From Octopus bimaculoides (Eukaryota), in NCBI RefSeq assembly GCF_001194135.2, contig NC_069001.1, positions 12,545,231-12,590,457 on the forward strand: DNA of 45,227 nucleotides. The letters run 5' to 3'. Numbering within the stretch: position 1 is the stretch's first letter; every line of letters starts with the position of its first letter. Below are positions 19,144 through 24,150 of the stretch, one piece after another. The notes beneath the pieces were generated by a model. That model did not search any database, was not told where the DNA came from, and saw only the letters and a list, made by a program, of their open reading frames with translations. Position numbers and translations under genes: made by a program.

Positions 19144-19204
19144 TGAATATTTATATATCATTATTTAAACAAATATATTACGTAACTCCAAGTTTCACCG
19201 TTTT

Positions 19205-19590
19205 CAGTCATGAAAGTTGACGTCATCGCCATCAGCCATATAATCGCTGCTATCATCATCTTCGAGATAATCATGATGTGCAGCAGCATCATTACCATCA
19301 TCATCACCAGCACCAGCACCACGACCAGCGTCGTTATTATCCTTATCGTCACCTTCTTCATAAGGATAGTCGTCGTCGTCGTCGTCGTCAACATCATCTT
19401 CATCATCGTCGTGGTCGTTATCTTCAGCATCACCATCGTAGACGTCGTCGTCGTCGTTATTATTGTCGTCATCGTCATCATCGTCTTCATCGAAGTCGCC
19501 GGCAATAGTCGTAGACGTCGTTGTCGTCAACAACGGCTTTGCCGCAGCTGACGCATCCGTATCGACGTCGGCGTCATTGTCGTCATGGTG
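19205..19590. repeat. (CAT/CGT/GTC)n cryptic simple sequence
   Basis: Triplet low complexity, open in several frames on both strands. Confidence 0.85.
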
Positions 19591-20231
19591 ATAGAGCTTG
19601 AAAGTCATTAAACGTAAAAATGTATGACTTCTGTGATTGTCTTGTTTCAAATTTCCTTTCACGTAACCAGAAGCAATATAGGGATATTATATAAACACAT
19701 ACACATTCATATACTGTCCACGCGATAATGATTATATGCACGTCCTCATATTAAGCCACACACACACACAAACCGGCATACGTACACGCACACTCGCACG
19801 CACGAAGTCACACATAGGAGCTTGATATATGAGCAGTTATCAACACACAGACAGATATTAAAAGACACACGCACGCATTCAGACAGACAAGGACACACGC
19901 ACACATACACACGCACAGTAGTACATACATATACGTACAAGAAATACACACATATGCATACATGTCCATGAACACACTCTCTCCCTCAGCAACGGTTATA
20001 TTGAAACTCCCAGATAGGATATACTTATACAAGCAGCAATAGTTACTCATACAGATACATACATACATACATACACACACACACATACACACACACACAC
20101 GTGTACACACGAACACACACGCGCAAAGGGTAAAACATACATACAAGGAAGTACACACATGCGCATACATACGCGTACTCATACTCAAATTAATTTATAC
20201 TGAAATAATACAATTATATTTAAGAGAATGT

Positions 20232-21552: not shown

Positions 21553-22635
21553 ATGATACAAAAAGGAGCGTATTTTGCTGCCGTCATTAGGATACTACAA
21601 AGATTTTTATGGAAACATGCACCTACGTATATGCAGACTAGCAATCGCCTCTATCACTCTCACCAATCAGTAATGGTGTAGAAGGATCTCGCAAGCAGCA
21701 ACCCTCGTTAATTGATTTACTTGTTAAATGAAGCAAGCAAAGACGTCAATGAACCGTGCTTTTTTTTAATCCTTCATACACAATTTCACGANNNNNNNNN
21801 NNNNNNNNNNNNNNNNNNNNNNNNNNNNNNNNNNNNNNNNNNNNNNNNNNNNNNNNNNNNNNNNNNNNNNNNNNNNNNNNNNNNNNNNNNNNNNNNNNNN
21901 NNNNNNNNNNNNNNNNNNNNNNNNNNNNNNNNNNNNNNNNNNNNNNNNNNNNNNNNNNNNNNNNNNNNNNNNNNNNNNNNNNNNNNNNNNNNNNNNNNNN
22001 NNNNNNNNNNNNNNNNNNNNNNNNNNNNNNNNNNNNNNNNNNNNNNNNNNNNNNNNNNNNNNNNNNNNNNNNNNNNNNNNNNNNNNNNNNNNNNNNNNNN
22101 NNNNNNNNNNNNNNNNNNNNNNNNNNNNNNNNNNNNNNNNNNNNNNNNNNNNNNNNNNNNNNNNNNNNNNNNNNNNNNNNNNNNNNNNNNNNNNNNNNNN
22201 NNNNNNNNNNNNNNNNNNNNNNNNNNNNNNNNNNNNNNNNNNNNNNNNNNNNNNNNNNNNNNNNNNNNNNNNNNNNNNNNNNNNNNNNNNNNNNNNNNNN
22301 NNNNNNNNNNNNNNNNNNNNNNNNNNNNNNNNNNNNNNNNNNNNNNNNNNNNNNNNNNNNNNNNNNNNNNNNNNNNNNNNNNNNNNNNNNNNNNNNNNNN
22401 NNNNNNNNNNNNNNNNNNNNNNNNNNNNNNNNNATATATATGGAAGATCTTATTACATACATTGTAGTGTAAAAGCCAGTCAGCTGAAAGTGTTATCGAA
22501 AAGTCACTCAGTATAAAACACATCATTGATAAAAGACAACTTGCATAATTTTGCTTTCCATTATTTTTCTTATTCTTTTTTGCTTCAATAATTTTTCTTT
22601 TCTTTTGGTTAGTTTTTAGTCAATTTTTTTTTTCC

Positions 22636-22684
22636 ACTCACCTGAAAGTAGAAAGAAAAAAAGAGAAAAAAAAAGATTCGTTAG
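22636..22684 (-). promoter_or_regulatory. Candidate recursive splice site (branch point + polypyrimidine tract + CAG|GTGAGT)
   Basis: Minus strand reads CTAAC GAA TCTTTTTTTTTCTCTTTTTTTCTTTCTACTTTC AG|GTGAGT. There is no other AG between the branch point and the acceptor. Confidence 0.55.
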
Positions 22685-22884
22685 ATATTTCGGTGTAGCT
22701 TTAAAAAAATCAATAATAGAAGTTATAGACAATTATAATAAATGACGCGGTCTGAAAAGAAAAAAAAACATATAGCACACATTATAATCATATATATATA
22801 TACATATATACACATTAAAATCACATGTATATATATATACACACACATATATATATAAACATATGCATACATATATATATATAC

Positions 22885-22946
<62 letters not shown>

Positions 22947-24150
22947 GTCATTTGTATATAAGTGTATATGTGTGAGTATATTCATACATTGTGTGTGGGA
23001 GCGGTGAGTGAGTTTGCGGATGTACGTATCTATGTATATATGATGTGTGTGCGTCTATGCTTTTGTATGTCGTTCTCGATGTCGTTCAGTGCTCGTCAGT
23101 GCGTTATTACTTCGCAAGATATAATGCAATTTCATTATACCTTTGCTCGTATGCATGGTTTAATCAGCCTCTTTCATACACTGTCTCTCGTTTCTCTTTT
23201 TCTGTCTCTTCCTGTGAAGATTCTTTGGAAAGTCGCCAAGACAGGTTAATGAGGACACGCAATCAGAAACTACCCCATAGCAAGTAGTTCATTTATGTTG
23301 CTTTGACTTCACCACATGCTTATAGAACTCATATGATCCAACATCCAATTTAGACACTTTATAAGCATTCATTCCATATGGATTACATAAATTAATGAGA
23401 GTCGACGTTTCATTTGAGATCCTCCCTCTTTCACAGCTTATCCTTTTGGTTCCAGTGCTGTAATTTAAGGTATTTGAGGCTGTATAAGAACAAGGAGTTC
23501 CGGAATATTTTTCCTGTATGCTACGTTAAATTTTCTACTGTATCTTCCAGGTTGTACTGACCCTATCACCCTCCCACTTCATATATATATATATATATAT
23601 ATATANNNNNNNNNNNNNNNNNNNNNNNNNNNNNNNNNNNNNNNNNNNNNNNNNNNNNNNNNNNNNNNNNNNNNNNNNNNNNNNNNNNNNNNNNNNNNNN
23701 NNNNNNNNNNNNNNNNNNNNNNNNNNNNNNNNNNNNNNNNNNNNNNNNNNNNNNNNNNNNNNNNNNNNNNNNNNNNNNNNNNNNNNNNNNNNNNNNNNNN
23801 NNNNNNNNNNNNNNNNNNNNNNNNNNNNNNNNNNNNNNNNNNNNNNNNNNNNNNNNNNNNNNNNNNNNNNNNNNNNNNNNNNNNNNNNNNNNNNNNNNNN
23901 NNNNNNNNNNNNNNNNNNNNNNNNNNNNNNNNNNNNNNNNNNNNNNNNNNNNNNNNNNNNNNNNNNNNNNNNNNNNNNNNNNNNNNNNNNNNNNNNNNNN
24001 NNNNNNNNNNNNNNNNNNNNNNNNNNNNNNNNNNNNNNNNNNNNNNNNNNNNNNNNNNNNNNNNNNNNNNNNNNNNNNNNNNNNNNNNNNNNNNNNNNNN
24101 NNNNNNNNNNNNNNNNNNNNNNNNNATATATATATATATATGACATGTAT

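What the first reader, a model, noticed from the sequence alone, without database searches (positions are those of the whole stretch)
22636..22690. Textbook recursive (ratchet) splice site on the minus strand: a zero-length exon in a probable giant intron
Seen in sequence: the minus strand reads aaataTCTAAC-gaa-TCTTTTTTTTTCTCTTTTTTTCTTTCTACTTTC-AG|GTGAGT. That is a CTAAC branch point (A at 22681, 39 nt upstream), 32 pyrimidines in 33 nt, no intervening AG, CAG at 22644-22642, and a consensus donor GTGAGT directly after at 22641-22636. It is the only site I spotted in the window with both a strong acceptor and a full donor consensus. Established: AG|GTRAGT ratchet points allow stepwise removal of long introns in Drosophila (e.g. 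Ubx) and in long vertebrate neural genes, often via cryptic RS-exons. A possible downstream cryptic donor, aat|GTATGT at 22460, would define a 181-nt RS-exon. Inference: the window lies in a long intron of a minus-strand gene that is recursively spliced. I know of no report of this in cephalopods or molluscs. Caveat: A/T tracts flank the site on both sides, so the pyrimidine tract could be chance simple sequence.
Basis: partly seen in the sequence, partly recalled or inferred. Interest (0 to 1): 0.75.

Follow-up and report, generated by a model that had tools for sequence, protein, structure and literature searches.

The report
Unverified recursive-splice-like motif in simple-sequence DNA
The sequence really does read as a perfect acceptor fused to a perfect donor splice site. 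It sits in low-complexity, gap-ridden DNA with no detectable gene, and hundreds of such sites are expected by chance in a genome this size, so its use in recursive splicing is unproven and more likely than not absent.

Summary
The minus strand reads TCTAAC, then a 33-nt tract with 32 pyrimidines (22676-22644), then CAG|GTGAGT (junction 22642|22641).

It is the only AG|GTRAGT among 136 AGGT sites in the window, and by far the most pyrimidine-rich. The motif-level features of a Drosophila-type ratchet point are met, including TT at -5/-6.

Nothing that would show use could be tested or found:
- 161 six-frame ORFs match no protein among 5.8 billion, so no exon is detectable on either strand. Intron and intergenic cannot be told apart.
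- No orthologous sequence or transcript data could be reached.
- The site lies in a 1172-bp contig piece between two N gaps. It sits exactly where a T-rich tract switches to an A-rich tract, with (TA)n on both sides.
- No short cryptic RS-exon donor follows.

A null that keeps the real pyrimidine tracts gives 0.002-0.017 such sites per window. That scales to 60-435 per Gb, so hundreds per large genome.

My estimates: chance motif about 0.55, genuine recursive site about 0.22, boundary of an ordinary or cryptic non-coding exon about 0.13. The organism (cephalopod) could not be verified. Interest is low to moderate.

The parts
22680..22685 (-). TCTAAC, a candidate branch-point consensus. The branch A is at 22681, position -40 from the junction.
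   Evidence: Mapped Drosophila ratchet-point branch points lie mostly at -36..-21 (10.1101/006163), so this one is slightly far.
22644..22676 (-). Pyrimidine tract with 32 Y in 33 nt and TT at -5/-6. It contains no AG.
   Evidence: It is one of 21 Y-rich tracts (>=27/30) in the window, 10 on the plus strand and 11 on the minus strand.
22642..22644 (-). CAG, the acceptor-like trinucleotide. The junction falls after 22642.
22636..22641 (-). GTGAGT, a consensus donor hexamer directly abutting the AG. With CAG it can pair at all nine positions -3..+6 with the U1 5' end (one G-U); this rests on established knowledge.
   Evidence: It is the only one of 55 GTRAGT in the window that is preceded by AG.
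22540..22635 (-). A-rich purine tract immediately downstream: 75/96 purines, 61 A. It includes a 28-nt imperfect tandem repeat and has no GT for the first ~100 nt.
   Evidence: The plus strand of this tract gives a near-match to the same acceptor/donor pattern at 22592-22613.
22455..22460 (-). GTATGT (AAT|GTATGT), the best downstream donor-like site. It would close a 181-nt RS-exon (22641..22461) that has stops in all three frames.
   Evidence: Weaker GTs lie at 22540, 22521 and 22507.
22752..22770 (-). A second acceptor-like site upstream, TGTTTTTTTTTCTTTTCAG|ACCGCG. Together with the GTGAGT donor it would delimit a 110-nt non-coding exon (22751..22642).
   Evidence: All three frames carry stops.
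22434..23605 (.). The 1172-bp contig piece that carries the site. It is bounded by N gaps 21792-22433 and 23606-24125 and by (TA)n arrays. Its placement and orientation depend on scaffolding.

Best explanation
The site is most likely a fortuitous splice-site look-alike. A T-rich simple-sequence tract, one of about twenty pyrimidine tracts in this microsatellite-laden window, happens to end in CAG and to abut a GTGAGT hexamer, one of 55 in the window. The result is a sequence identical in form to a ratchet point.

There is no evidence that it lies in a transcribed minus-strand intron. In that case it does nothing.

What is shown: the motif, its uniqueness in the window, the low-complexity setting, the absence of detectable exons, and the chance expectation.

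What is inferred: that it is not used.

Conditional mechanism, from established splicing biochemistry: if the minus strand were transcribed as part of a long intron, U2AF and U2 would be expected to recognise the tract, the AG and the TCTAAC. The upstream exon would be joined to 22641. The regenerated exon|GTGAGT would pair with U1 and be re-spliced, leaving no trace in mRNA. So the site is competent on paper but unproven in use.
For: 1. The 8-mer AGGTRAGT is at chance frequency: 1 found against 1.64 expected.
2. A null that keeps the real pyrimidine tracts expects 0.002-0.017 YAG|GTRAGT-after-tract sites in this window, which is 60-435 per Gb. An independent estimate from 4 strong acceptor-like sites x 55 GTRAGT gives about 0.003. 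A multi-Gb genome would therefore hold hundreds by chance.
3. The local context is simple sequence. The Y tract switches at the site to a 96-nt tract that is 78% purine. (TA)n arrays and assembly gaps lie on both sides. The opposite strand gives a near-match to the same pattern 30 nt away.
4. No coding exon is detectable on either strand anywhere in the 45 kb, and there are no RNA genes.
5. There is no downstream donor within 100 nt, whereas Drosophila ratchet points carry cryptic RS-exons of about 50 nt (PMC8605326).
6. In vertebrate-sized genomes fully suppressed intronic ratchet points are rare. Nine were noted definitively in mammals (PMC8605326), and they are rare in mouse brain (PMC8797253 title and abstract).
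Against: 1. Within this window the combination is a clear outlier: 29/30 pyrimidines against 23/30 for the next AGGT, and it is the only AG|GTRAGT.
2. It also carries features that were not part of the search pattern. These are TT at -5/-6, found in 99.5% of 197 Drosophila ratchet points (10.1101/006163), a strict CTAAC just upstream of the tract, and an AG-free interval.
3. In Drosophila a motif of this strength in a long intron is usually a real, conserved ratchet point. Duff et al. (10.1101/006163) verified 91 of the 160 sites that Burnette et al. predicted from motif plus conservation.
4. A 45-kb stretch without exons is what a giant intron would look like.
5. I could not test transcription or conservation, so non-use is an inference from base rates, not a result.
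Confidence: 0.55

Rival explanations
1. It is a genuine zero-nucleotide recursive splice site (ratchet point) in a giant intron of a minus-strand gene. The upstream exon is first spliced to 22642|22641. The regenerated GTGAGT donor is then used to remove the rest of the intron. Recognition might go through a long cryptic RS-exon that ends at 22461 or 22508.
For: The full motif is present: tract 32/33 Y, TT at -5/-6, CAG|GTGAGT, a CTAAC branch point and no intervening AG (defining features from 10.1101/006163). The window has no detectable exon over 45 kb, which is compatible with a very long intron. A purine-rich tract directly after the junction could serve as an exonic enhancer for RS-exon definition (my inference). 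The within-window chance expectation is about 0.003.
Against: The genome-wide chance expectation is hundreds of sites. There is no evidence for a spanning transcript. The setting is low-complexity, with a mirrored A-tract. The branch point sits at -40, outside the usual -36..-21. There is no donor within 100 nt to form the ~50-nt cryptic exon seen in flies, and the candidates at 134-185 nt are weak (PMC8605326). Abundant intronic ratchet points are documented only in Drosophila, and large vertebrate genomes have few. Contig orientation rests on scaffolding.
Confidence: 0.22
2. GTGAGT is the donor of an ordinary or cryptic non-coding exon, or the CAG is the acceptor of one. One candidate is a 110-nt exon (22751..22642) bounded by the upstream acceptor TGTTTTTTTTTCTTTTCAG. 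Another is a 181-nt exon (22641..22461). It would belong to a UTR, a lncRNA, or a poison or pseudo-exon of a minus-strand transcript.
For: Two strong acceptor-like sites 110 nt apart and one consensus donor give a textbook exon-definition unit. Both candidate exons have stops in all three frames, so only a non-coding or poison role is possible.
Against: No transcript evidence could be obtained. A 110-nt exon of which 33 nt is a pyrimidine tract would be unusual. The same chance argument applies as for the recursive site. Nothing in the protein searches supports a gene here.
Confidence: 0.13
3. The pyrimidine tract is the antisense of a decayed A-rich tail of a retroposed element. The site would then be a by-product of transposon insertion, the way antisense Alu tails create acceptors. 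It could be present in many copies genome-wide.
For: On the plus strand 22645-22677 is an A/G-rich run (GAAAGTAGAAAGAAAAAAAGAGAAAAAAAAAGA). The window is full of interspersed repeats and retroelement fragments.
Against: No second copy of any part of 22434-23605 exists in the window. No repeat library for this organism was available. The sequence to the left of the run on the plus strand is itself T-rich simple sequence, not an obvious element body.
Confidence: 0.1

Closest known systems
Drosophila intronic ratchet points (zero-nucleotide exons; Hatton 1998, Burnette 2005, Duff 2015, Joseph 2018/2021, Pai 2018)
   Same: Juxtaposed acceptor and donor with AG|GTRAGT, a very prominent T-rich tract, TT at -5/-6 and an A branch point upstream. 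The downstream sequence is out of frame and stop-rich, as cryptic RS-exons are (10.1101/006163; PMC8605326).
   Different: Location in a long sense intron, ultraconservation of the SA|SD core, junction, saw-tooth and lariat evidence are all untested. The branch point is at -40 rather than -36..-21. There is no ~50-nt cryptic exon donor. The site is embedded in simple sequence. The genome appears to be a large, repeat-rich one, where the chance background is far higher than in the fly.
Vertebrate RS-exon type recursive sites (Sibley 2015; Blazquez 2018)
   Same: AG|GTGAG is among the accepted RS motifs (listed in 10.1101/2024.12.11.627982). A possible 134-185-nt RS-exon has a weaker downstream donor that would lose in competition to the consensus RS donor.
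   Different: The downstream donors are weak and unconserved as far as can be seen. Fully suppressed sites are rare in mammals: nine are definitive per PMC8605326. There are no expression data.
Pseudo-exons and decoy splice sites in low-complexity or transposon-derived intronic DNA (e.g. antisense Alu poly-U acceptors)
   Same: A strong acceptor is created by a homopolymer-like T tract next to a chance AG and a chance donor. The sequence is non-coding and sits in a repeat-rich neighbourhood.
   Different: No parent element was identified. In a pseudo-exon the donor and acceptor bracket an interval, whereas here they are directly fused.

Membership tests
Drosophila-type intronic ratchet point (zero-nt recursive splice site) | [quoted passage not shown] | tested here: met
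   CAG|GTGAGT at 22644..22636, the only AG|GTRAGT in the window.
Drosophila-type intronic ratchet point (zero-nt recursive splice site) | Prominent pyrimidine tract with TT at -5/-6 (99.5% of 197 sites) | tested here: met
   32/33 Y at 22676..22644, with T at 22646 and 22647 (10.1101/006163).
Drosophila-type intronic ratchet point (zero-nt recursive splice site) | Branch point A, mostly -36 to -21 from the acceptor | tested here: inconclusive
   The best consensus (TCTAAC) puts the A at -40. The other As are at -41, -37/-36 (non-consensus) and -8. Actual use is not testable.
Drosophila-type intronic ratchet point (zero-nt recursive splice site) | Lies in a long intron (>11 kb) on the sense strand of an expressed gene | not testable with these tools
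   No exon was detected on either strand in 45 kb and no annotation could be reached. This is compatible with either an intron or intergenic DNA. Strand also depends on scaffolding of a 1172-bp contig.
Drosophila-type intronic ratchet point (zero-nt recursive splice site) | Short cryptic RS-exon (~50 nt) closed by a weaker downstream donor | tested here: not met
   There is no GT for ~100 nt after the donor. Candidates appear only at 101-185 nt (CAA|GTTGTC, GAT|GTGTTT, TGA|GTGACT, AAT|GTATGT) (PMC8605326). A longer RS-exon remains possible.
Drosophila-type intronic ratchet point (zero-nt recursive splice site) | SA|SD core far more conserved than its flanks and than other intronic AGGT | not testable with these tools
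   No orthologous or allelic sequence was retrievable.
Drosophila-type intronic ratchet point (zero-nt recursive splice site) | Exon-to-ratchet-point junction reads, saw-tooth read density, recursive lariats | not testable with these tools
   There is no RNA-seq access.
Vertebrate RS-exon recursive site | RS acceptor with a reconstituted donor, plus a downstream donor that defines an RS-exon recognised by exon definition | tested here: inconclusive
   The motif AG|GTGAG is acceptable. The only moderate downstream donor is AAT|GTATGT, 181 nt away. Strength could not be scored with a species model.
Conventional internal coding exon boundary | Open reading frame through the exon adjoining the splice site | tested here: not met
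   There are stops in all three frames of both the 110-nt upstream interval and the 181-nt downstream interval, and no protein homology.

The most novel reading that the evidence does not exclude
The site is a functional, constitutively used ratchet point in a giant intron of a minus-strand gene of a cephalopod or other lophotrochozoan. That would be the first recursive splice site described outside insects and vertebrates. It would imply that zero-nucleotide recursive splicing is an ancestral bilaterian way of handling very long introns. In the searchable library no paper links recursive splicing to cephalopods or molluscs beyond one incidental co-mention.
Probability: 0.2. Interest if true: 0.5.

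Novelty: new member of a known kind. Interest (0 to 1): 0.25.

Why it matters
If the site is used, it would extend recursive splicing to a third major animal lineage. It would also offer a way to study how genomes with very long neural-gene introns keep splicing accurate. That would be an expected extension rather than a surprise, because the mechanism already exists in both flies and vertebrates.

If it is not used, which I think more likely, it is a useful caution. In large, microsatellite-rich genomes a perfect AG|GTRAGT with a long pyrimidine tract arises by chance at roughly 60-435 sites per Gb. Motif-only prediction, which works in the compact fly genome, therefore has little predictive value without strand, conservation and RNA evidence.

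The novelty label "new member of a known kind" applies only under the recursive-splicing reading. Under my best explanation there is no functional feature.

Tried and rejected
- RNA structure: the 161 nt around the site fold no better than shuffles (z = -0.10). The T-arm/A-arm hairpin idea was dropped.
- Known RNA families and tRNAs: none in the window.
- Repeat membership: there is no second copy of 22434-23605 in the window. The 14/16 match ACTTTCAGCTGACTGG at 22491..22476 (D10) is at the level expected by chance for this region size (my estimate is about 2 such pairs). It was not pursued.
- Exact look-up of ORFs spanning or next to the site (22616-22732 minus, 22962-23249 plus): not on record.
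Two concatenated six-frame ORF queries then gave no hits.
- Organism identification via the best transposon hits (Logan SRR7158634, 92.6% DNA identity; GCA_024449705.1, 79%): the accessions could not be resolved to a species in the paper library.
- Metagenome scans for a unique flank and for the core: 0 hits.
- Strand-composition skew as a proxy for transcription direction: per-kb AT skew changes sign irregularly, 26 negative and 19 positive bins. It is not informative.
- Dinucleotide-shuffle expectation (0.04): rejected as a null because shuffling destroys the pyrimidine tracts. It was replaced by the tract-preserving nulls.

Full report
**What is there**

Reading the minus strand from 22690 to 22636 gives AAATATCTAACGAATCTTTTTTTTTCTCTTTTTTTCTTTCTACTTTCAG|GTGAGT, exactly as reported.
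- The donor hexamer occupies 22641..22636 and the CAG occupies 22644..22642.
- The 33-nt tract 22676..22644 has 32 pyrimidines.
- TCTAAC is at 22685..22680, with its branch A at 22681. That is position -40 counting the last intron G as -1.
- There is no AG between that A and the acceptor.
- AAT|GTATGT lies at 22460..22455, 181 nt downstream.

**How unusual it is**

AGGTRAGT occurs once on the two strands, against 1.64 expected from dinucleotide shuffles, so the octamer itself is unremarkable.

The combination is unusual for this window:
- Of 136 AGGT sites, this one has 29 of 30 upstream pyrimidines and the runner-up has 23.
- Of 55 GTRAGT hexamers (28 plus, 27 minus), it is the only one preceded by AG.
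- Only four sites in the window pass a strong-acceptor filter of >=18/20 Y followed by YAG.

Shuffles give 0.04 matches to a tract-plus-junction pattern against 2 observed. Shuffling destroys the tracts, however, so I used nulls that keep them.
- Summing the first-order Markov probability of AGGTRAGT over all positions that really follow a strong tract gives 0.002-0.017 expected per window.
- The product of 4 acceptor-like sites and the GTRAGT density gives about 0.003.
- Scaled by the 39.7 kb of non-N sequence, this is 60-435 sites per Gb.

For one window the site is an outlier. For a genome of a few Gb, hundreds of equally good sites are expected with no selection at all.

**The setting**

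The window is a draft-assembly scaffold with 22 N runs (5528 N), about 35% GC, and dense (TA)n, (CA)n and other simple repeats.

The site lies in a 1172-bp contig piece (22434-23605) between gaps of 642 and 520 N. Its strand relative to its neighbours therefore rests on scaffolding.

Within that piece the unique stretch that carries the site is bounded by (TA)n arrays on both sides. The pyrimidine tract gives way, exactly at CAGGTGAGTGG, to a 96-nt tract that is 78% purine and 64% A and contains a 28-nt imperfect tandem repeat. Read on the plus strand, that A-rich tract is itself a T-rich tract. It yields a two-mismatch match to the same acceptor/donor pattern at 22592-22613.

The window holds 21 pyrimidine tracts of >=27/30, 10 on the plus strand and 11 on the minus strand. 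This is the compositional background in which a chance acceptor is easy to make.

The RNA around the site has no structure beyond shuffles (z = -0.10). No other copy of the contig piece exists in the window.

**Gene context**

The key claim, a spanning minus-strand intron, could not be tested.
- Rfam and tRNA scans are empty.
- I translated all six frames and kept the ORFs that were not simple-sequence or in-window repeats. I searched them as two concatenated queries against 5.8 billion proteins: 69 ORFs of >=40 aa and 92 further ORFs of >=28 aa. Neither returned a single hit.
- The only protein-like sequences are transposon relics. One is a reverse-transcriptase C-terminal / zf-RVT fragment at 39523-40032 on the minus strand. 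The other is a roughly 930-bp element with 130-nt inverted ends at 29950-30878. The translated fragments of that element looked mariner-like to me by eye, which is my own reading and untested; Pfam found nothing.

Forty-five kilobases without a detectable exon fits a giant intron, but it fits an intergenic desert just as well.

The per-kb AT skew flips sign irregularly and gives no hint of a transcription direction.

Exact-sequence look-ups of ORFs over and beside the site found nothing. Metagenome scans for a unique flank and for the core found nothing. No ortholog or transcript could therefore be examined.

The organism is also unverified. The best transposon relatives are an unnamed Logan contig (92.6% DNA identity) and an unnamed GenBank assembly (79%), with cnidarian and echinoderm proteins further off. 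This fits a marine invertebrate but does not establish a cephalopod.

**Comparison with known recursive sites**

Duff et al. (10.1101/006163) define Drosophila ratchet points by:
- AG|GT with juxtaposed consensus sites;
- a more prominent pyrimidine tract than ordinary introns;
- TT at -5/-6 in 196 of 197 cases;
- branch points mostly at -36 to -21;
- location in introns of 11-133 kb;
- strong conservation of the core;
- junction reads, saw-tooth coverage and lariats.

Joseph et al. [quoted passage not shown]

Here the first three features are met, and the branch point is slightly too far.
The short RS-exon is absent. There is no GT at all for about 100 nt, and then only weak donors at 101-185 nt.

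The remaining features, which are the ones that distinguish used from unused sites, cannot be tested.

A conventional coding-exon boundary is excluded. Both the 110-nt interval from an upstream acceptor-like site (TGTTTTTTTTTCTTTTCAG|, AG at 22753-22752) and the 181-nt downstream interval carry stops in all frames.

**Weighing it**

The posterior turns on whether the source species has hundreds of conserved intronic ratchet points, as flies do (more than 500 per PMC8605326), or only a handful, as mammals do. PMC8605326 notes nine definitive fully suppressed sites in mammals, and PMC8797253 reports that they are rare in mouse brain.
- Against roughly 200 or more chance sites per genome, a fly-like species would make a site like this more likely real than not.
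- A vertebrate-like species would make it a few per cent.

With no data for any lophotrochozoan I give the fly-like scenario about one in three.

The extra positive features are the strict CTAAC, TT at -5/-6 and the AG-free interval. The extra negative features are the simple-sequence mirror context, the missing short RS-exon and the branch point at -40. These roughly cancel.

That gives these estimates:
- about 0.22 for a genuine recursive site;
- about 0.13 for a boundary of an ordinary or cryptic non-coding exon;
- about 0.55 for a chance, unused motif;
- the remainder for a transposon-tail origin or something not considered.

The transposon-tail origin overlaps with the chance reading.

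**Verdict**

The decisive tests are cheap given the genome annotation, total RNA-seq and sister-species assemblies, and they are listed under next steps.

Noticed in passing
window 4548-4697 and 25740-25907: The sequences on the two sides of two 10-N gaps are near-identical direct duplicates. 4548-4617 matches 4628-4697 at 100% over 70 nt, and 25740-25818 matches 25829-25907 at 97.5% over 79 nt. This looks like unmerged overlapping contig ends, an assembly artefact rather than a real tandem duplication.
   Followed up: no
window 39523-40032 (minus strand): A degenerate retroelement fragment (reverse-transcriptase C-terminal / zf-RVT region). It is 92.6% identical in DNA to a Logan contig from run SRR7158634 and 79% identical to a contig of GCA_024449705.1. 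Protein relatives occur in cnidarians and echinoderms.
   Followed up: partly
window 29950-30878: A roughly 930-bp element bounded by 130-nt inverted repeats (29950-30079 and 30749-30878, 87% identical). Its translated fragments looked mariner-transposase-like to me by eye, but Pfam found nothing.
   Followed up: partly
window 249-502/6199-6457; 4095-4254/6317-6475; 9823-10049/11068-11291; 15800-15964/20391-20555/27239-27344; 16212-16363/36125-36276/10359-10454: At least five families of short (100-260 nt) interspersed repeats at 75-87% identity, probably SINE-like elements. They occur in both orientations.
   Followed up: no
window 25934-25988 (plus strand): A (GTGA)n microsatellite generates nine tandem GTGAGT 'donor' hexamers. 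Simple repeats alone can therefore produce consensus donor strings in this genome.
   Followed up: no
window 7138-7771 (minus strand) and 38609-38977 (plus strand): Long clusters of pyrimidine-rich (CT-type) tracts, with extreme strand skews in the 7-8 kb and 38-39 kb bins. Their origin is unexplained; they are probably degenerate (CT)n arrays.
   Followed up: no
window 19160-19660 and 41780-42950: Extended trinucleotide-type low-complexity regions that translate as runs of D, H, I/V or L in several frames on both strands. They are not coding as far as the protein searches show.
   Followed up: no
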